A DNA stretch of 64,000 nucleotides. Source: Haliotis rubra (taxonomy: Eukaryota). The notes under the pieces are model-generated. The model searched no databases. It had not been told where the DNA came from and saw only the letters and a list, made by a program, of their open reading frames with translations. The stretch spans positions 806,001 to 870,000 of the forward strand of contig NW_025766973.1 in assembly GCF_003918875.1 (NCBI RefSeq), read 5' to 3'. Below are positions 14,903 through 64,000 of this stretch, piece by piece. The position numbers and the translations under genes are program-made. Position 1 is the stretch's first letter; every line of letters begins with the position of its first letter.

Positions 14903-15240
14903 ATAATAATAATGAGAATATTTATAACGCGCCCTTTTCAAGTGCACAATCTGATCATGATTACCCCAGATAACGCAAGCTGCCTGTGAGGTGCTAGCAG
15001 GTTAATGATCACATGACTAATCCCACCAGGTACCCATTTCCTGCTGGGTGAACAAAGGCAATTTTGAACAAACTTATTTGCCTAAGGTGAGAACACGTGT
15101 TTCGTTGTGAGGCAGGACTGAAGTCCGAGAAACTCTCAGGAGTCAAGCTGTCAAACATGGTCACCCATCCAAGGACTCTCTGCGCCCAACGTTGCTTAAC
15201 TTCAACTGATTGTGAACGGAGTTCTTTGCACAGGACCACA
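14903..15240 (-). mobile_element. 5S rRNA-derived SINE with Deu/Nin-like core and L2-like tail
   Basis: GAAGTTAAGCAACGTTGGGCG..AGTCCTTGGATGGGTGACC (5S box A to box C), TTCACCCAGCAGGAAATGGGTACCTGG (Deu/Nin-like), GCGCGTTATAAAT..(ATT)n tail. Confidence 0.75.
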
Positions 15241-16143
15241 CACTCCCACCACCCATGCTCCACACGTCCCCACCACGCATGCTCCACACACCCCCACCAC
15301 GCATGCTCCACACACCCCCACCACCCATGCTCCACACTACCCCACCACCCATGCTCCACACACACCCACCACCCATGCTCCACACACACCCACCACCCAT
15401 GCTCCACACACACCCACCACCCATGCTCCACACACACCCACCACCCATGCTCCACACACACCCACCACCCATGCTCCACACTACCCCACCACCCATGCTC
15501 CACACTACCCCACCACCCATGCTCCACACACACCCACCACCCATGCTCCACACACCCCCACCACCCATGCTCACACACACACCCACCACCCATGCTCACA
15601 CACACCCCCACCACCCATGCTCCACACTACCCCACCACCCATGCTCCCACACACACCCACCACCCATGCTCCACACACCCCCACCCATGCTCCACACACA
15701 CCCCCACCCATGCTCCACCCCCCATATGCTACCCACCCCCTCCACACCCCCACCCATGCCCCCCACCCCCACTCCACACACCCCACCACCCATGCTCCAC
15801 ACACCCCCACCATCCATGCTCCACACACACACACACACACCACCCATGCTCCACACACCCCCACCACCCATGCTCCACACACCCCCACCATCCATGCTCC
15901 ACACACCCACCATCCATGCTCCACACACCCACCACCCATGCTCCCACACACCCCCACCATCCATGCTCCACACCCCCACCACCCATGCTCCACACACCCA
16001 CCATCCATGCTCCACACCCCCACCATCCATGCTCCACACACCCCCACCACCCATGCTCCACACACCCCCACCATCCATGCTCCACAGACACACACACACA
16101 CCACCCATGCCCCACACACACCCACCACCCATGCTCCACACCC
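15240..16143. repeat. ~24-bp C/A-rich minisatellite (CACCCATGCTCCACACACCCCCAC)
   Basis: Directly visible. Confidence 0.95.
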
Positions 16144-56700: not shown

Positions 56701-58332
56701 AAACGTCCTTCTCTCTCCCTTTAATCTCAATGATGGCTCTCTAATAACACATGATCTTCAAAGTTTATCACTTAAAATCTCAACCTTAAAGAAACGTATC
56801 ATAATCTCAATGCCATGGCTCTCAAATAACATGTGATCTTCAAAGTTTATCACTTAAACTCTTAACCTTAAAGGTATGTATCATCTACCCAAAGTCCCCA
56901 CTTTATTCCAAATTTGCCAGGGAGTTGAACTCACAGTGCAACCTTGACCTTTCACATACTGTCACAAAATGTCATACCATGTCACATGACACTGACTCAA
57001 GTAACCTCGAACCAAATGTAAGCCAAAGATTTATAACCAGATTTGATTTTCACACAAAATGGACAGGGAGTAGAACAAACAATTTAATAAAGTCACCTCA
57101 AGATGACCTTCATTGGATTCCACTTGCAGCAAGCTGTCAGATATCAGACAAACACATTTATACATAAACATGACTTGTTTTAATGTGTGTTCATGATGTG
57201 TTCTTAAGTATTTTGCGGGGCGGTGGGGTAGCCTAGTGGTTAAAGCGTTGGCTCGTCACGCCGAAGACCCGGGTTCGAATCCCCACATGGGCACAATGTG
57301 TGAAGCCCATTTCTGGTGTCCCCTGCCGTGATGTTGCTGGAATATTGCTAAAAGCGGCGTAAAACCAAACTCAGTCAGTCTTAAGTATTTTGAGTCTGAA
57401 ATGCTAATTAATAATTTTGTGCATAAAAAAATTATATACCCATGGAAATAAATAAGGGAACATATGAAAGTACAAGTGTTCCTTTATTGTTTTGAAGGTT
57501 TCTTCACAAGGTATGTATTGCACAGTGGGTGAAATTCTGGAAATGAAAAAAGGAACATAGGTATGCTCATGTGTTCCCTTATTTGTTTCCATGAGTATAT
57601 AATAATTTTCAATCATTGTCCTTTGCATCCTCTTTCTCATGTGCTCAAACAGCTGGGTCACTGAAGACATGACATGATAAATCAATAACTTCATTTAAGA
57701 CAAGGGGCGGTGGGGTAGCCTAGTGGTTAAAGCGTTGGCTCGTCACACTGAAGACCCGGGTTCGAATCCCCACATGGGTACAATGTGTGAAGCCCATTTC
57801 TGGTGTCCCCCGCCGTGATGTTGCTGGAATATTACTAAAAGCGGTGTAAAACCAAACTCAGTCAGTCAGTCATTTAAGACAACCACTCTCATGACAATCT
57901 GTGGAATGCGGAAATACAAATGAAGTTTTTCTGATACAACTAAAACACAGTGAAAGGTTTTGTCAAATGGACGTCAAAGGCCTTTTGGAATCTACAGTCA
58001 AACAAACCATTTTGTCAAGGTTGAAGGGACCTATAAAAATACTTTGAGCTATCTGAAGTTTGCTACAAATCTGATGATAAAGAACATATACAATAGGACC
58101 AAACATAAGTCTGACACAAGGTAGTGTGACGCTTCAAAGTAAAAAAACAAACCACAGATTTGTCATCAGGAGCTAATATTTTGAAGGAAGCCATACTATT
58201 TGGTCAAGTTACTCTTACGACATGACTTTCCTCCTTGGAACACCTACCCTGTTTCTGCCCTTGCGTTCCACACAGCAGCACAGCAGCTGCAGCCGACGGT
58301 CCCAACTCTCCTCATAAGCTCGGAACGCCTTC
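25255..58332 (-). CDS. DAGLA: Diacylglycerol lipase alpha (sn1-specific, 2-AG synthesis), 5'-incomplete in window
   Basis: Spliced peptides match the DAGL-alpha family: SWDRRL..CC, FRDLDVVPSDVIAGLVLLR, ALAAYGWP, DNCC.CN, ETPFYVALDH..VRGTLS, GHKGM, GHSLGAG (Ser), GKDVVPR (Asp), HPSD..PLFPPGKIIH, EVLISPTMINDH (His), plus the long alpha-type C-tail. Exons: 58248-58332, 47709-47843, 46125-46327, 45002-45134, 43549-43632, 41965-42123, 41695-41837, 39250-39318, 37606-37678, 36600-36789, (29403-29439 candidate), 27604-27736, 25255-26724. Confidence 0.93.
27030..27660 (-). repeat. 111-bp tandem repeat of DAGLA exon end plus donor
   Basis: Unit encodes ISPTMINDH.P.NVLEALEK|VSVRTWSYLS.KQLTI.; ~5.5 copies. 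Confidence 0.95.
27604..27736 (-). CDS. DAGLA: DAGLA exon with catalytic His
   Basis: PVCQSSEPVYQAVWAGNGDFDEVLISPTMINDHMPDNVLEALEK|GTATCT. Confidence 0.9.
28015..28184 (-). mobile_element. Family A SINE
   Basis: Full length; TSD AAATTACCAGA. Confidence 0.9.
28473..28743 (-). mobile_element. Family B retroposon, apparently full length
   Basis: GACCCGTGAAGGTCCCGGG start, (ACTC)n tail, TSD AACTTTGATCTGTGA. Confidence 0.85.
28780..29008. mobile_element. hAT-like MITE
   Basis: TIR AGTGTATGAAATAAG(G)CCC; 8-bp TSD ACTGTTGC. Confidence 0.65.
29403..29439 (-). CDS. DAGLA: Candidate 37-nt DAGLA microexon
   Basis: TTTGTTTTTCAG|...|GTAAGT; 3n+1 length reconciles the phase-1 donor at 36600 with the phase-2 acceptor at 27736; reads (G)KWLDIVPLVIC(M). 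Confidence 0.5.
29775..30780. repeat. TG-rich degenerate repeat with ~175-bp higher-order duplication
   Basis: Directly visible. Confidence 0.9.
31810..34800. repeat. 30-bp minisatellite (GCTGGGTGATACAGGCTAACATTTGACGTG) grading into a 60-bp dimer and degenerate copies
   Basis: Homogeneous 31810-33790, dimeric 33800-34240, degenerate to ~34800. Confidence 0.95.
34917..35086 (-). mobile_element. Family A SINE, young
   Basis: Full length; TSD CTCAGACCATGA. Confidence 0.92.
36600..36789 (-). CDS. DAGLA: DAGLA exon (regulatory loop, PLFPPG signature)
   Basis: WKIISKGVFCCCG...AHPSDSQIGLSAHVPLFPPGKIIHIVRSHPKSQ; ends in phase 1. Confidence 0.92.
36822..37035 (+). mobile_element. Family B retroposon
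   Basis: GTCGTAAGAGGCGACTAACGGG core and tail. Confidence 0.85.
37606..37678 (-). CDS. DAGLA: DAGLA exon
   Basis: IGLPQMELLRTDIINMIKKSIDPK. Confidence 0.9.
37740..37905 (+). mobile_element. Family A SINE
   Basis: A/B boxes, body, tail. Confidence 0.9.
39250..39318 (-). CDS. DAGLA: DAGLA exon with catalytic Asp
   Basis: ISCVEETKSYITSVVVGKDVVP(R). Confidence 0.92.
39677..39830 (-). mobile_element. Family B retroposon, 5'-truncated
   Basis: Matches 28473-28630. Confidence 0.8.
40470..41440. repeat. 24/30-bp minisatellite (GCTGTG[GCTGTG]GCTAGTCAACCTGATATT)
   Basis: Directly visible. Confidence 0.95.
41695..41837 (-). CDS. DAGLA: DAGLA exon with GxSxG nucleophile
   Basis: ELSSKKYDLTLVGHSLGAGTAAILAILLQPEFPTLHCYAFSPPGGLI. 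Confidence 0.95.
41965..42123 (-). CDS. DAGLA: DAGLA exon
   Basis: DVLTDLKAEAETLPLTPPREDWQGHKGMVQAAVYIKKRLDEEGIIIKAMNLAE. Confidence 0.92.
42250..42816. mobile_element. TA-flanked MITE
   Basis: TIR core GTCCGGTAATTC(T/C)GCGCA at both ends; TA at 42248-49 and 42817-18. Confidence 0.75.
42820..43580 (-). repeat. ~36-bp tandem repeat of DAGLA exon end plus donor
   Basis: GTGTGAGGGGCACATTGTCATTACAG|GTAGGTTGTC, ~20 copies. Confidence 0.95.
43549..43632 (-). CDS. DAGLA: DAGLA exon
   Basis: IGETPFYVALDHAEKTVVVCVRGTLSLQ. Confidence 0.92.
45002..45134 (-). CDS. DAGLA: DAGLA exon (Cys-rich)
   Basis: CCCCNKQRNAIVIDDNCCLCNFSALRRISGLQEVDVVYATYHVD. Confidence 0.92.
45872..46025 (+). mobile_element. Family A SINE
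   Basis: A/B boxes, body, tail. Confidence 0.85.
46125..46327 (-). CDS. DAGLA: DAGLA exon
   Basis: GNNDVYQYLSGVPITPHTQFL...YMRHALAAYGWPATMMINPGTWLCRLMPFL. Confidence 0.92.
46273..46780 (-). repeat. ~90-108-bp tandem repeat of DAGLA acceptor plus exon start
   Basis: TCTGTCCCCAG|GGTAACAATGA..TACCAGTACCTG, five copies including the real one. Confidence 0.92.
47165..47320 (+). mobile_element. Family A SINE
   Basis: A/B boxes, body, tail. Confidence 0.85.
47709..47843 (-). CDS. DAGLA: DAGLA exon
   Basis: NSIAEIAQLFTEFFRDLDVVPSDVIAGLVLLRQFQKQRMANIVWQ. Confidence 0.92.
48175..49100. mobile_element. Cluster of 4-5 family A SINE copies/fragments around assembly gaps
   Basis: Copies at ~48175-48240, 48345-48440, 48460-48622 (-), 48838-48935 (+), 48943-49100 (-); N runs 48039-48174 and 48668-48836. 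Confidence 0.8.
51090..51335. repeat. 30-bp tandem repeat (AACATGTTCACTGATTCAGTAAACAAGATG), ~8 copies
   Basis: Directly visible. Confidence 0.9.
52291..52752 (+). mobile_element. Family A SINE (52291-52452), family B element (52490-52690) and CTA/CCA microsatellite
   Basis: Match to other copies in the window. Confidence 0.85.
53214..53342. other. Assembly gap (N run)
   Basis: Ns. Confidence 1.
53745..53940 (-). mobile_element. L2/CR1-group LINE ORF2 fragment
   Basis: CHALLHGLHHSLITRLERVQNMAASIISRTRKPDYFT..CWLPLKYRIQFKILTLLFK matches the post-RT motif YCNSLLYGLP..LQRVQNAAAR..HWLPV..RI.FKI. Confidence 0.8.
54318..54495 (-). mobile_element. Family A SINE, young
   Basis: Full length; TSD GACTAGGTGAATA. 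Confidence 0.92.
54886..56272 (+). repeat. 105-bp tandem repeat, ~13 copies
   Basis: Period 105 (e.g. 54991 to 55096); near-identical units. Confidence 0.95.
57215..57378 (+). mobile_element. Family A SINE, young
   Basis: TSD TCTTAAGTATTTTG. Confidence 0.92.
57704..57869 (+). mobile_element. Family A SINE, young
   Basis: TSD TCATTTAAGACAA. Confidence 0.92.
58248..58332 (-). CDS. DAGLA: DAGLA exon (most 5' found in window)
   Basis: KAFRAYEESWDRRLQLLCCCVERKGRNR; TTTACAG| ... |GTAGGT. Confidence 0.85.
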
Positions 58333-59574
58333 CTGTAAACACCCACAACACATATCAACACTCGCATATCATAGCAGTGCATTAGTGGCATCCAAATGAC
58401 AATTTAAATGTCAATATATATGACATATCATCATTAAAAATCTTTGTGCAATGTCTTCATTCAATTAAAAGCAGCACTTAATAAAACTTATCATTTTTGG
58501 TTTAATTTAAAGTAATTCAAAAATAGATCCAATTATTTTGATGTATATCTACATTACTATTCATGGTTGTTCCTTATGACATGAAACTAAAATTACTGGT
58601 TTAACTATCATCTGGGATAATGTGTCTCCTTCAATTTCAAAATACCATCATAAATGGCTACCATTATATATTTCATAATATTACATTCTATATTTGGTAG
58701 CAAAATTTCAGGTTAAATTTAATCCTGCAGAGAACACACATGGACATATAAACTTCAGTACATATCCGAACTTGTTAGCGCTCATTATTATACTCCTTTT
58801 CTTAGAGAATGATTGTACAAATTGATTTCCAAGCCAAATCGATGACTCAATAACTAAAGCCAAATATTTACATTGAATTTCATGATCAGGACCCCGTTCC
58901 TCAAAGCGATCGTAGAGCTACGACAGTCGTAAGTCTGTGTTAAAGTATGGGAGTTACGATCATAATAGCGCTACGATCGCTTTCAGGAACAGGGCCCAGA
59001 ACTGTAACAACAGGAATATGAGGGAATATCCAAATATGACTCAAATACCATGCTGCAAAATGAGTGTTTCCAAAAGAACTAAATGGTACGGAAGTTACAC
59101 AGCACGACAGTAATTTATCACTTGCTGACAGGATGTATTGAACAGTGTTACAATAATAAGGTCATGATGGTACTTAATTACACAGAATAAACATTACAGT
59201 GTTTATATGTTAAAAAAGTGCAGAAAATGTTAAACATGTAACATATACCATAGATTTTTTCTAATATTCATTAGATGCATGTTATCTTCATCACACATCT
59301 TTAACTGTCTTCCAGACTCTGAGTACATGATCTTAGCACTTAGATCTGTCGGATGCCAATATTAAGCTCAAGCAGTTACAACTGTCTTAGCATTAAGATG
59401 GCTTGAGTGAATTAGGATCAGGATATGGCATTTCTGAACCAAGCTTCAGGTCATGATGGCCATGAAGAAAGGAGAATTGAGTTCAGCTCCAGAGCCAAAG
59501 ATTAGGAGAAAGAACTAAGTGGAAGAGGTGGAAGTCTCAGGTGTCCAAATATTATCAGATATCTTTTAGGTGGT

Positions 59575-62140
59575 TCATCTTTAAGGTGGTCCATCCATCA
59601 ATGAGCTATCTGGATGTTCTATATTGGTCAACCATGCAAGTACTATCTGGATGTTCTTTAGTGGTCAACAATCCAAGTACTATGTGGATGTCCTCAGGTG
59701 GTCATGCATCCAAGTACTATCTGGATGTCCTCAGGAGGTCATGCATCCAAGTACTATCTGGATGTTCTTTGGTGGTCAACAATCCAAGTACTATGTGGAT
59801 GTCCTCAGGTGGTCATGCATCCAAGTACTATCTGGATGTTCTTTGGTGGTCAACAATCCAAGTACTATCTGGATGTCCTCAGGTGGTCATGCATCCAAGT
59901 ACTATCTGGATGTCCTCAGGAGGTCACCCATCCAAGTACTATCTGGATGTCCTCAGGTGGTCACCCATCCAAGTACTATCTGGATGTTCTTTGGTGGTCA
60001 ACAATCCAAGTACTATCTGGATGTCCTCAGGTGGTCACCCATCCAAGTACTATCTGGATGTTCTCAGGTGGTCACCCATCCAAGTACTATCTGGATGTTC
60101 TTTGGTGGTCAACAATCCAAGTACTATCAGGATGTCCTCAGGTGGTCATGCATCCAAGTACTATCTGGATGTTCTTTGGTGGTCAACAATCCAAGTACTA
60201 TCTGGATGTCCTCAGGTGGTCATGCATCCAAGTACTATCTGGATGTTCTATATTGGTCAACCATGCAAGTACTATCTGGATGGTCTTTAGTGGTCAACAA
60301 TCCAAGTACTATGTGGATTTCCTCAGGTGGTCATGCATCCAAGTACTATGTGGATGTCCTCAGGTGGTCAACAATCCAAGTACTATCTGGATGTCCTCAG
60401 GTGGTCAACAATCCAAGTACTATCTGGATGTCCTCAGGTGGTCATGCATCCAAGTACTATCTGGATGTCCTCAGGTGGTCACCCATCCAAGTACTATCTG
60501 GATGTTCTTTGGTGGTCAACAATCCAAGTACTATCAGGATGTCCTCAGGTGGTCATGCATCCAAGTACTATCTGGATGTTCTTTGGTGGTCAACAATCCA
60601 AGTACCATCTGGATGTCCTCAGGTGGTCATGCATCCAAGTACTATCTGGATGTTCTTTGGTGGTCATGCATCCAAGTACTATCTGGATGTTCTTTGGTGG
60701 TCAACAATCCAAGTACTATCTGGATGTCCTCAGGTGGTCACCCATCCAAGTACTATCTGGATGTCCTCAGGTGGTCACCCATCCAAGAACTATCTGGATG
60801 TTCTTTGGTGGTCAACAATCCAAGTACTATCAGGATGTCCTCTGGTGGTCATGCATCCAAGTTCTATCTGGATGTTCTTTGGTGGTCAACAATCCAAGTA
60901 CTATCTGGATGTCCTCAGGTGGTCATGCATCCAAATACTATCTGGATGTCCTCAGGTGGTCATGCATCCAAGTACTATCTGGATGTTCTTTGGTGGTCAA
61001 CAATCCAAGTACTATCTGGATGTCCTCAGGTGGTCACCCATCCAAGTACTATCTGGGTGTCCTCAGGTGGTCACCCATCCAAGTACTATCTGGATGTTCT
61101 TTGGTGGTCAACAATCCAAGTACTATCTGGATGTCCTCAGGTGGTCACCCATCCAAGTACTATCTGGGTGTCCTCAGGTGGTCACCCATCCAAGTACTAT
61201 CTGGATGTTCTTTGGTGGTCAACAATCCAAGTACTATCTGGATGTCCTCAGGTGGTCATGCATCCAAGTACTATCTGGATGTTCTTTGGTGGTCAACAAT
61301 CCAAGTACTATGTGGATGTCCTCAGGTGGTCAACAATCCAAGTACTATCTGGATGTCCTCAGGTGGTCATGCATCCAAGTACTATCTGGATGTCCTCAGG
61401 TGGTCACCCATCCAAGTACTATCTGGATGTCCTCAGGTGGTCATGCATCCAAGTACTATCTGGGTGTTCTATATTGGTCAACCATGCAAGTACTATCTGG
61501 ATGTTCTTTAGTGGTCAACAATCCAAGTACTATGTGGATGTCCTCAGGTGGTCATGCATCCAAGTACTATCTGGATGTTCTTTGGTGGTCAACAATCCAA
61601 GTACTATCTGGATGTCCTCAGGTGGTCATGCATCCAAGTACTATCTGGATGTTCTATATTGGTCAACCATGCAAGTACTATCTGGATGTTCTTTAGTGGT
61701 CAACAATCCAAGTACTATGTGGATTTCCTCAGGTGGTCATGCATCCAAGTACTATGTGGATGTCCTCAGGTGGTCAACAATCCAAGTACTATGTGGATGT
61801 CCTCAGGTGGTCATGCATCCAAGTACTATCTGGCAGTCCTCAGGTGGTCATGCATCCAAGTACTATCTGGATGTTCTTTGGTGGTCAACAATCCAAGTAC
61901 TATGTGGATGTCCTCAGGTGGTCACCCATCCAAGTACTATCTGGATGTTCTTTGGTGGTCAACAATCCAAGTACTATGTGGATGTCCTCAGGTGGTCACA
62001 TATCCAAGTACTATCTGGATGTTCTTTGGTGGTCAACAATCCAAGTACTATCTGGATGTCCTCAGGTGGTCATGCATCCAAGTACTATCTGGATGTTCTT
62101 TGGTGGTCAACAATCCAATACAAGTCCTATCTGGATGTTC
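59575..62140 (-). repeat. 37-bp minisatellite, ~69 copies, related to 5S rRNA box C
   Basis: + strand unit CCAAGTACTATCTGGATGTCCTCAGGTGGTCACCCAT and variants. Confidence 0.95.
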
Positions 62141-63883
62141 CGACCACCTGCACACTGTTTACACATCCACTTTGAGCCCTCACTTTCTAAGTACAGAATA
62201 CTGGAACAAAGTTTTCTATTTATTTTATATTCTAGATTTTAAACTTTTGGATATAGATTAGATTTTTGGGTCAACCTATTACCGATGCTGTTAACAGTGC
62301 TTCAGGACAAACAGAGACATGTCAGGCAGTGCAAATGGCTGTGAGTTGGTATCACTTAGAATGAAGACAATGGAATATAAAACATAGTTTCCACTGATCT
62401 TTAACTTCCTTCTGTACCAGTGCTTCATAACAGCACAACACGAACATACCATAGCAAATGTGAAAAAATATCAATCACATCTCACATATATTAAGGTGAA
62501 GCAAGTCATCACATTTTGCAATACGATTATAAGTTTCATTAAAAGTTTAACATTGATAAAGTGATGCAAAGAAAGCAGAGCCATCTCATCCCAAGATTCC
62601 AATGTACTCTATCAGATAGGGAGCAATATGTGGGTTAGGTTAGTAGACGATACAACAGCGTTAGCTGTGAGCACTGACAGGAATGTCACCCACACAGTAC
62701 ACAATACAATACAAGATGTTAACGAGGGTGAAACTGTTGCACAAAGTACATCTACAATATCAATTACATCAAAAAGAACAAATTTAAATGAGTAACTGAC
62801 TGATGAACATTGAGGACAATTGTATGCATATAAAACTTCTTTATTCTGTACAGGCAACGTTTCAACATAGATTCTAATGTTGTTGTCAAGCAAGTGGTGA
62901 CGACGACATATACGTCAAAACGTCGCCTGTACAGAAAATCGAAGTTGTATATCCATAAAATTGTCCTCATTCTTCATTTCCTCAACTTCTAGAATGCTAA
63001 TCAAAGAGGTGACTGATGAAGGTTGAAATATGCAGGTCATCTTGGGAGAATATATAACATAGAATGTATATATTTGTAAATAATGTACCAGTTATGCTCA
63101 TAGAACTTTCATGATAGTTTAGCAGTATTACTCATCCTCAGATACCACCAGGCATATATACAGTGATTTTTAACTGAGTTTGTATGAAATTGATTTTGTG
63201 AAACAAGGAGTAGAATGTCAAAACTAATTCCAAGTGTAAATCTTTAAGGATATAGATGTGAATGTATTAATCTCCCTCACATGTTTTGAGAGGTTGTAGT
63301 TGTATAAAACTAGGCTATAAAGTTTACACTATTATTGTGATATACTAGCAATACAACCATTGTGATGTCATTACAATTGTGACACTAGCCTCAACAATGG
63401 AGACTGTATTCCATCAACAATATTTACTGCATGAAAGTTTTGTTACATGTGCATTGTATGCTTGTTTATTAATCAAGGTTCAAGGATCATCGTAAATAAA
63501 TCACATGTAATGTAAATGTTCTGTTTGTTTTGACATTGATGTAACTACATCCATCACTTGGGTGTTTGATAAATGTTGGTGGTGTGACCCCAACTTTAAT
63601 ACTACCAGCTAGTTCAGTGGAACACATCTACAGTTTTAAACTGAAACCATTATGAACACTTCATGTTACTGTTGTTTTAGTTGATTTTGGCCAAAATTTC
63701 ACGAACAATTCCAACATGCATTTTAAAGAAGCAAAACTGATGTAACTATAGCTTTTTAAATATAATTATAGGGAAAATGTGTATCATGGTTTAAGTCCTG
63801 GAAATTAGTCAAATCTTTGGATTCCAGAAGTAGGGTTGGGTTGTTGATTCACTTCTGAGATCAACAGATTCTCACAATTTATC

Positions 63884-64000
63884 CATTATGGACATACCTG
63901 TAGGAATCTGAGGACATTGTGGACATACCTGTCTGAGGAATCTGAGGACATTGTGGACATACCTAGAGGAATCTGAGGACATTGTGGACATACCTGTAGG
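63884..64000. repeat. ~31-bp tandem repeat running off the window end
   Basis: TGGACATACCTGTAGGAATCTGAGGACATTG, about 4 copies. Confidence 0.9.

What the first reader, a model, noticed from the sequence alone, without database searches (positions are those of the whole stretch)
59575..62140. 2.5-kb minisatellite made from the 5S rRNA internal control region (box C)
Seen: on the - strand the unit reads GATAGTACTTGGATGGGTGACCACCTGAGGACATCCA. Established: invertebrate 5S rRNA has TTAGTACTTGGATGGGTGACCGCCTGGGAATACC, which includes the box C site bound by TFIIIA; the match is 20 nt exact with further similarity. About 13 of ~69 units keep GGATGGGTGACC; the others are two recurrent variants (GGATGCATGACC, GGATTGTTGACC) in higher-order patterns. 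Box A is absent, so this is not a 5S gene cluster. Inference: a satellite derived from 5S or a 5S-SINE that could act as a multimeric TFIIIA site inside a DAGLA intron. 5S-derived satellites are known in other taxa, but I cannot say whether this one is described.
Basis: partly seen in the sequence, partly recalled or inferred. Interest (0 to 1): 0.7.

Follow-up and report, generated by a model that had tools for sequence, protein, structure and literature searches.

The report
Intronic minisatellite born from 5S rRNA
A 2.5-kb run of 68 copies of a 37-base piece of this abalone's own 5S ribosomal RNA gene sits in an intron of a diacylglycerol lipase gene; it is a real but most likely functionless single-locus repeat, and a small-scale relative of the 5S-derived satellites known in fish, frogs and plants.

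Summary
Window 59611-62131 (- strand) has 68 head-to-tail 37-bp units with no indels after the first. Degenerate units lie at both edges.

The unit is colinear with positions 71-107 of this genome's own 5S rRNA gene: 22 nt exact and 31-32 of 37 ungapped. The local score is 51 against 13.2 +/- 2.1 for 5000 shuffles. It covers all of box C (80-97), none of box A, and has no terminator.

A genome-wide 31-mer search (up to 3 mismatches) hits only this array and the true 5S genes. The abundant 5S-headed SINE matches worse (23/37), so I favour a 5S gene or pseudogene fragment as the source. A unit-junction 23-mer occurs only here in 1.38 Gb, so this is a single-locus minisatellite, not a dispersed satellite.

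It lies in a ~10.8-kb intron of a DAGL-alpha-like gene, in sense orientation. Contigs from two other labelled organisms, probably related species, reach its edge, so it probably predates their split.

The TFIIIA-sink idea has no support:
- Only 13 units keep the GGG core.
- Variation concentrates on that core.
- Both CpGs are lost.
- The genome holds 1919 exact copies of the box-C 15-mer.

An unexpected extra: at least four other minisatellites elsewhere are built on the SINE's box-C segment. The scan had not noted this array on other DNA.

The parts
59611..62131 (-). Core array: 68 units of 37 bp (the first, at 62090-62131, is 42 bp), 5S-sense on the - strand
62132..62140 (-). Partial unit (last 9 nt of a unit) at the upstream edge of the array
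   Evidence: read directly
59529..59610 (-). Probable degenerate units at the downstream edge. The first aligns to the unit with score 22 against 13.8 +/- 2.1 for shuffles. It includes TRF's 16-bp row at 59561-59595.
61905..61941 (-). Example of the GGG-core unit (13 copies), 31/37 identical to own 5S positions 71-107. Its box C part is 17/18 identical to the gene's.
60055..60091 (-). The single unit closest to 5S (32/37). It combines the GGG core with the GAAC tail also seen in the TGT class. It is a candidate ancestral form, or a recombinant.
62053..62089 (-). Example of the GCA-core unit (23 copies)
62016..62052 (-). Example of the TGT-core unit (22 copies with the CAAAGAAC tail, 4 with the GGG-type tail)
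61646..61682 (-). Example of the fourth variant (4 copies), always the last member of a three-unit GCA/TGT/variant pattern
58239..58334 (-). DAGL-alpha-like exon (aa 195-226 of P0001) that closes the host intron on its 3' side. The exon on the 5' side (aa 136-196) is outside the window at G000:C2083:875119-875301.
14903..15245 (-). Copy of the abundant 5S-headed SINE, used as the rival source and found to be the poorer match

Best explanation
This is a single-locus, intronic minisatellite that grew from a 37-bp fragment of a 5S rRNA gene or pseudogene (gene positions 71-107).

Inferred history:
1. A piece of 5S-type DNA came to lie in this DAGL intron.
2. A 37-bp segment bounded by GG dinucleotides (70-71 and 107-108) was duplicated in tandem.
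3. Unequal exchange or replication slippage expanded it to about 68 copies. This spread a few variant units and produced loose 2-, 3- and 5-unit patterns and one 7-unit internal duplication.
4. The sequence decayed as neutral DNA.

It is transcribed only passively, as part of the DAGL pre-mRNA, because its 5S-sense strand is the gene's sense strand. It is not a 5S gene and most likely has no function.

Shown: the array, its 5S homology, its uniqueness in the assembly, its intronic position and its decay pattern. Inferred: the way it arose and its neutrality.
For: - Homology: 22 nt exact and 31-32/37 ungapped to the species' own 5S; 0 of 5000 shuffles reach the score.
- The unit shares the gene's GATAG start. 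The Rfam consensus and the SINE differ there.
- A whole-genome 31-mer search at up to 3 mismatches finds only this array and full-length 5S genes; the reversed control finds 0.
- The junction 23-mer at up to 2 mismatches gives 65 hits, all in this array.
- The flanks between the array and two unrelated MITEs are single-copy.
- The intron and strand are set by the DAGL exons.
- Neutral decay: there are 0 CpG in 2479 bp and both CpGs of 5S 71-108 are mutated. Variation is concentrated at unit positions 15-17 (the GGG of box C) and at 24-27 and 30.
- Degenerate units lie at the edges.
- Age: contigs of organisms B and C cover the flank at about 93% and 89% identity, end at or in the array edge, and show excess summed depth over the array bins.
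Against: - No remnant of 5S positions 1-70 or 108-119 is detectable in either flank (scores 16-17 against 15.3 +/- 2 for shuffles). The original insert is therefore not preserved, and its nature (gene fragment, pseudogene or filler DNA) is inferred.
- The GG microhomology is only 2 nt.
- Retention in three taxa could also reflect constraint.
- Array length in the assembly is unverified, because reads could be laid only on the edge.
- No RNA runs were on record.
Confidence: 0.72

Rival explanations
1. The array grew from a copy of a 5S-headed SINE that had inserted in the intron, not from 5S gene DNA.
For: - Such a SINE is abundant (at least 4209 first-look candidates), and one copy lies in the same gene.
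- At least four other loci carry minisatellites of 20-43 bp built on the SINE's box-C segment. This shows that SINE copies do seed such arrays.
Against: - The SINE consensus matches the unit at 23/37, against 31-32/37 for the gene. It diverges both before box C and right after it, where the unit still follows the gene.
- No SINE copy appears within 3 mismatches of the 31-mer.
- No SINE body or tail flanks the array.
Confidence: 0.15
2. The array is a selected multimeric TFIIIA (box C) binding platform, acting as a factor sink, boundary or Pol III-related regulator within DAGL.
For: - Thirteen units carry a box C that is 17/18 identical to the gene's.
- This local density is unique in the assembly.
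- The array appears to be retained in two related taxa.
Against: - 55 of 68 units have lost the GGG core, and the variable positions are concentrated on it.
- There is no box A, only 2 of the 6 intermediate-element positions, and no T-run terminator (element coordinates from PMC6204057).
- The genome has 1919 exact box-C 15-mers, so the array adds under 1%.
- Both CpGs have been lost.
Confidence: 0.05
3. The likeness to 5S is chance, or the array is an assembly artefact.
For: The Rfam hit is below the gathering score.
Against: - The shuffle z-score is about 18.
- The reversed-pattern genome controls give 0 hits.
- Independent runs of the same organism reproduce the flank-to-array junction with 1 difference in 714 nt.
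Confidence: 0.02

Closest known systems
5SHindIII-DNA satellite of the fish Hoplias malabaricus (Martins et al. 2006, as described in PMC2713275)
   Same: It is a tandem repeat derived from the species' 5S rDNA, it is no longer a gene, and it is lineage-restricted.
   Different: Its unit is 360 bp (95 bp gene-like plus 265 bp spacer-like), found at 18-22 centromeric sites. Here the unit is a 37-bp sub-genic piece with no spacer, at one euchromatic intronic locus of 2.5 kb.
PcP190 satellite of hyloid frogs (PMC11675491; Vittorazzi et al. 2011)
   Same: It is 5S-derived, tandem, and shared by related species.
   Different: Its unit is about 190 bp, with a 120-bp region about 70% similar to the whole transcribed 5S. 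It is high-copy, heterochromatic, sex-chromosome-enriched and transcribed. Here only positions 71-107 are used, at about 85% identity, in low copy.
5S rDNA-derived satellite on the Plantago lagopus B chromosome (Kumke et al. 2016, cited in PMC12692304)
   Same: A 5S-derived sequence was amplified outside the rDNA arrays.
   Different: That case is a chromosome-scale amplification. I did not read the details, so this comparison rests on the title only.
Classical single-locus minisatellites (10-100-bp units, kb-scale arrays, variant-repeat interspersion)
   Same: Unit size, array size, a single locus, interspersed variant units, degenerate edges and an intronic position all match.
   Different: The source of most minisatellites cannot be traced. 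Here the seed is identifiable as a defined segment of a Pol III gene.
SINE-internal minisatellites of this same genome (G000:C303:161511-161775, C2398:624695-624921, C2203:291693-291956, C2158:748949-749040)
   Same: They contain the same GGATGGGTGACC core and are short tandem arrays.
   Different: Their units (about 20, 28 and 42-43 bp) follow the SINE sequence on both sides of the core, not the 5S gene. I could not fetch them.

Membership tests
5S rRNA gene (Rfam RF00001) | Full-length match to the covariance model at or above the gathering score (38 bits) | tested here: not met
   The best hit is 25.5 bits (E 0.029). Only the box-C part aligns, and the rest is forced across neighbouring units. 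There were no hits at gathering level in the window. True genes score 113.5 bits.
5S rRNA gene (Rfam RF00001) | Complete internal control region (box A 50-64, intermediate element 67-72, box C 80-97) and a T-run terminator | tested here: not met
   The unit spans 71-107 only. Box C is present, box A is absent, 2 of the 6 intermediate-element positions are present, and there is no run of four T in any unit. Coordinates are from PMC6204057, citing Pieler et al. 1987.
5S rDNA-derived satellite DNA | Tandem array whose unit is significantly similar to the species' own 5S transcribed region | tested here: met
   31-32/37 identity, and 0 of 5000 shuffles reach the score.
5S rDNA-derived satellite DNA | Unit made of most of the gene, with or without spacer; high copy number at many, usually heterochromatic, sites | tested here: not met
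   The unit is 37 of 119 nt. All 65 junction matches in 1.38 Gb are at this locus. Caveat: assemblies can under-represent satellites.
Single-locus minisatellite | 10-100-bp unit, kb-scale array, unique flanks, interspersed variant repeats | tested here: met
SINE-derived tandem repeat | Unit colinear with a SINE consensus; SINE parts flank the array | tested here: not met
   The match to the consensus built from 30 copies is 23/37, against 31/37 to the gene. The flanks carry no SINE parts.
TFIIIA binding site (box C) | Box C sequence intact | tested here: inconclusive
   Identity to the gene's own box C is 17/18 in the 13 GGG units, 15/18 in the GCA units and 13/18 in the TGT units.
TFIIIA binding site (box C) | Binding of TFIIIA in vitro or in vivo | not testable with these tools
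   This needs EMSA or ChIP.

The most novel reading that the evidence does not exclude
The box-C segment of 5S-type sequences may be a recurrent seed of minisatellites in this abalone genome. Besides this gene-derived 37-bp array, at least four other loci carry arrays of about 20, 28 and 42-43 bp built on the same core from SINE copies. A box-A 12-mer pair control gives none, although its 15-mer has 1128 copies against 1919 for box C. That would point to a sequence-specific cause of tandem duplication, such as a bound protein (for example TFIIIA) or a structure that stalls replication. With one control and a handful of loci, the excess is only suggestive: about 3 were expected and 0 seen.
Probability: 0.15. 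Interest if true: 0.55.

Novelty: new variant of a known kind. Interest (0 to 1): 0.3.

Why it matters
This is a clean, datable example of how a tandem repeat is born, because the seed can be named to the base: 5S positions 71-107. The variants that later spread can be ordered against that ancestor, and the locus is single-copy and shared by related abalones. Minisatellite origins can rarely be traced like this. The known 5S-derived satellites use whole genes in large heterochromatic arrays, so a sub-genic, euchromatic, intronic version widens that picture slightly. It also offers a natural series of box-C variants (GGG, GCA, TGT) for anyone testing TFIIIA binding in a mollusc. As a regulatory element it is unsupported.

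Tried and rejected
- **5S remnants in the flanks:** the local alignment of 300 bp on each side to the full gene is no better than shuffles.
- **Array carried by a transposon:** the only repeated flank pieces are two unrelated hairpin MITEs, 580 and 700 bp away.
- **Hairpin-driven slippage:** the units folded as single-stranded DNA are no more stable than shuffles (z -0.18 to +1.1).
- **Strict higher-order repeat:** identity at lags of 1 to 44 units is flat (0.86-0.91). The only long internal duplicate is 7 units at a lag of 38.
- **Coding repeat:** the 837-aa open frame on the + strand is a by-product of a stop-free unit. The Pfam hits have no stretch that passes on its own.
- **RNA-structure covariation between the variable core and tail positions:** the GCA class changes the core with no partner change, so this was rejected by inspection.
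- **Fetching the upstream exons and the other box-C arrays:** Exon places came from a search without loci.
- **Expression:** no RNA run holds the stretch.
- **Literature:** searches found no description of this array, or of a 5S-derived repeat in abalone, in the held library.
- **N runs:** the N runs of the window were left untouched.

Full report
**What is there.** On the - strand, window 59611-62131 is a head-to-tail array of 68 units of 37 bp.
- Tandem Repeats Finder lists it at 59584-62118 under periods 74, 111 and 185, with 88-89% matches and no indels.
- Anchoring on the unit start gives 66 spacings of exactly 37 and one of 42.
- The units fall into a few classes, defined by three core bases and a linked tail. 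There are 23 GCA units, 22 TGT units with a CAAAGAAC tail and 13 GGG units. A further 4 are TGT units with the GGG-type tail, 4 are a fourth variant and 2 are odd.
- Variation is almost confined to unit positions 15-17, 24-27 and 30. The other positions are invariant or nearly so.
- There is no strict higher-order repeat. There are loose 2-, 3- and 5-unit patterns and one 7-unit block repeated 38 units away.
- A 9-nt partial unit (62132-62140) lies at one edge and probable degenerate units (59529-59610) at the other, as expected where homogenisation is weakest.

**Is the 5S likeness real?** Yes.
- The genome holds full-length 5S genes scoring 113.5 bits, in tandem repeats of about 3.4 kb. One is at L001:1501-1619.
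- The GGG-type unit is colinear, without gaps, with gene positions 71-107. It has 22 consecutive identical bases and 31 of 37 overall. One unit (60055-60091) reaches 32 of 37.
- The local alignment score is 51 against 13.2 +/- 2.1 for 5000 shuffles of the unit, and none reaches it. All four classes beat all their shuffles.
- Rfam's 5S model finds the array only below threshold (25.5 bits, gathering 38), and only through the box-C part.
- By the Xenopus coordinates quoted in PMC6204057 (box A 50-64, intermediate element 67-72, box C 80-97), the unit holds all of box C, two positions of the intermediate element and no box A. No unit has a run of four T. It is not a gene cluster.

- The element at 14903-15245 is indeed a member of an abundant 5S-headed SINE (at least 4209 first-look candidates). 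I built a consensus from 30 copies.
- That consensus shares the 12-nt core but departs from the unit on both sides, and matches 23 of 37.
- A 31-mer of the GGG unit, searched in the whole 1.38-Gb assembly with up to 3 mismatches, hits only the array and the true 5S genes. All of those are on the contigs where full-length genes were found. The reversed-pattern control gives none.
- The unit also begins with the gene's own GATAG, where the Rfam consensus and the SINE differ.
- I therefore favour a fragment of a 5S gene or pseudogene, at about 5 to 1 over a SINE.
- Neither flank keeps any trace of gene positions 1-70 or 108-119, so the original insert itself is not preserved.

**One locus, in an intron, in sense.**
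- A 23-mer that spans the unit junction, and so cannot occur in a 5S gene, has 65 matches at up to 2 mismatches. All lie in this array. A 371-bp query found no other place.
- The flanks are single-copy out to two unrelated hairpin MITEs.
- An exon ORF found a 1184-aa protein, P0001, annotated as diacylglycerol lipase-alpha-like of Haliotis rufescens.
- P0001's exons map to the - strand of the window at 82-100% identity for most. The window therefore comes from an abalone; I did not resolve the species.
- The exon for residues 195-226 is at 58239-58334. The next one upstream (136-196) is at G000:C2083:875119-875301, beyond the window.
- The array therefore sits in an intron of about 10.8 kb. 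Its 5S-sense strand is the gene's sense strand, so it is copied into the pre-mRNA. This last step is an inference.

**Age.**
- Contigs of public runs were laid on the edge region, 58700-59850.
- Two runs of organism A reproduce the flank and the entry into the array almost exactly.
- A contig of organism B covers the flank at about 93% identity, and one of organism C at about 89%. Both end in or at the first units, as short-read contigs do at repeats.
- Both runs show summed depth over the array bins several-fold above the flank. The tool warns that this is not a copy number.
- The array thus probably predates the split of these taxa. I could not see their units.

**Function.** Nothing supports a selected TFIIIA platform.
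- Only 13 of 68 units keep the GGG triplet, and the variable positions concentrate on it. From memory of the Xenopus TFIIIA structures (not tested here), that triplet lies at the centre of the finger 1-3 contact.
- Both CpGs of gene positions 71-108 are mutated, and the 2479-bp array has no CpG at all. This is what decay of neutral DNA in a methylated gene body would give.
- The genome carries 1919 exact copies of the 15-nt box-C core, mostly in SINE copies, so the array adds under 1%.
- Binding could still occur on the 13 intact units, and that needs an experiment.
- My best account is a neutral minisatellite. A 37-bp segment bounded by GG at 70-71 and 107-108 was duplicated. It then expanded by unequal exchange or slippage, and a few variants spread.
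- Hairpin-driven slippage is not supported, because the units fold no better than shuffles.

**An unexpected side result.**
- A search for two box-C cores 10-45 bp apart found this array. It also found tandem arrays at four other loci with periods of about 20, 28 and 42-43 bp. Their units follow the SINE, not the gene.
- The same search with a box-A 12-mer found none, although its 15-mer has 1128 genomic copies against 1919.
- This hints that the box-C segment is prone to tandem duplication. With one control and a handful of loci it is only a lead.

**Comparison with what is known.**
- 5S-derived tandem DNA is established. Examples are 5SHindIII in Hoplias (360-bp unit of gene plus spacer, 18-22 centromeric sites; PMC2713275), PcP190 in frogs (about 190 bp, with a 120-bp region about 70% like the transcribed 5S; PMC11675491), and a Plantago B-chromosome satellite (cited in PMC12692304).
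- This array shares their origin but not their scale. It has a sub-genic 37-bp unit, one euchromatic intronic locus and 2.5 kb in all.
- In form it is a classical minisatellite whose seed happens to be traceable. I rate it a new variant of a known kind, of modest interest.
- I found no description of it, or of a 5S-derived repeat in abalone, in the held library. That library is incomplete.

**Limits.**
- The interior of the array could not be checked with reads.
- Further genome letters could not be fetched.
- No RNA run was available.
- No other abalone assembly could be searched.
- The N runs in the window were left alone.

Noticed in passing
G000:C303:161511-161775; C2398:624695-624921; C2203:291693-291956; C2158:748949-749040: Other short tandem arrays (periods about 42-43, 43, 28 and 20-40 bp) are built around the same GGATGGGTGACC core, but with the flanking sequence of the 5S-headed SINE. 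A box-A control pattern gave none.
   Followed up: partly
window 58886-59000: A hairpin MITE of about 110 bp belongs to a very abundant family (1118 first-look candidates). It is absent from the orthologous contigs of organisms B and C (a clean skip of 58887-58996), so it inserted after those lineages split.
   Followed up: partly
window 62803-62977: A second, unrelated inverted-repeat element (70-nt arms, 81% complementary) belongs to another abundant family (993 first-look candidates).
   Followed up: partly
window 15236-16141: A 24-bp minisatellite (38 copies, 83% matches) directly abuts the 5' end of the 5S-headed SINE copy at 14903-15245. The SINE consensus begins with a similar GT-rich motif, so the array may have grown from the SINE's own 5' end.
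   Followed up: no
G000:C1330:14523-50035; C2174:1024313-1041444; C1494:5754-38996: The true 5S rRNA genes stand in tandem repeats with about 3.37-3.39 kb spacing on at least three contigs. A few weaker copies (58-98 bits) elsewhere look like variants or pseudogenes.
   Followed up: no
G000:C2083:998043-998141 and G000:C1285:50695-50793: The first coding exon of the DAGL-alpha-like gene (aa 1-33) lies about 130 kb upstream of the array. It has an equally good second copy on another contig, which may be a haplotig or a duplication. The gene spans more than 170 kb.
   Followed up: no
window 63884-64000: A 31-bp tandem repeat (3.7 copies) runs off the end of the window, in the same intron.
   Followed up: no
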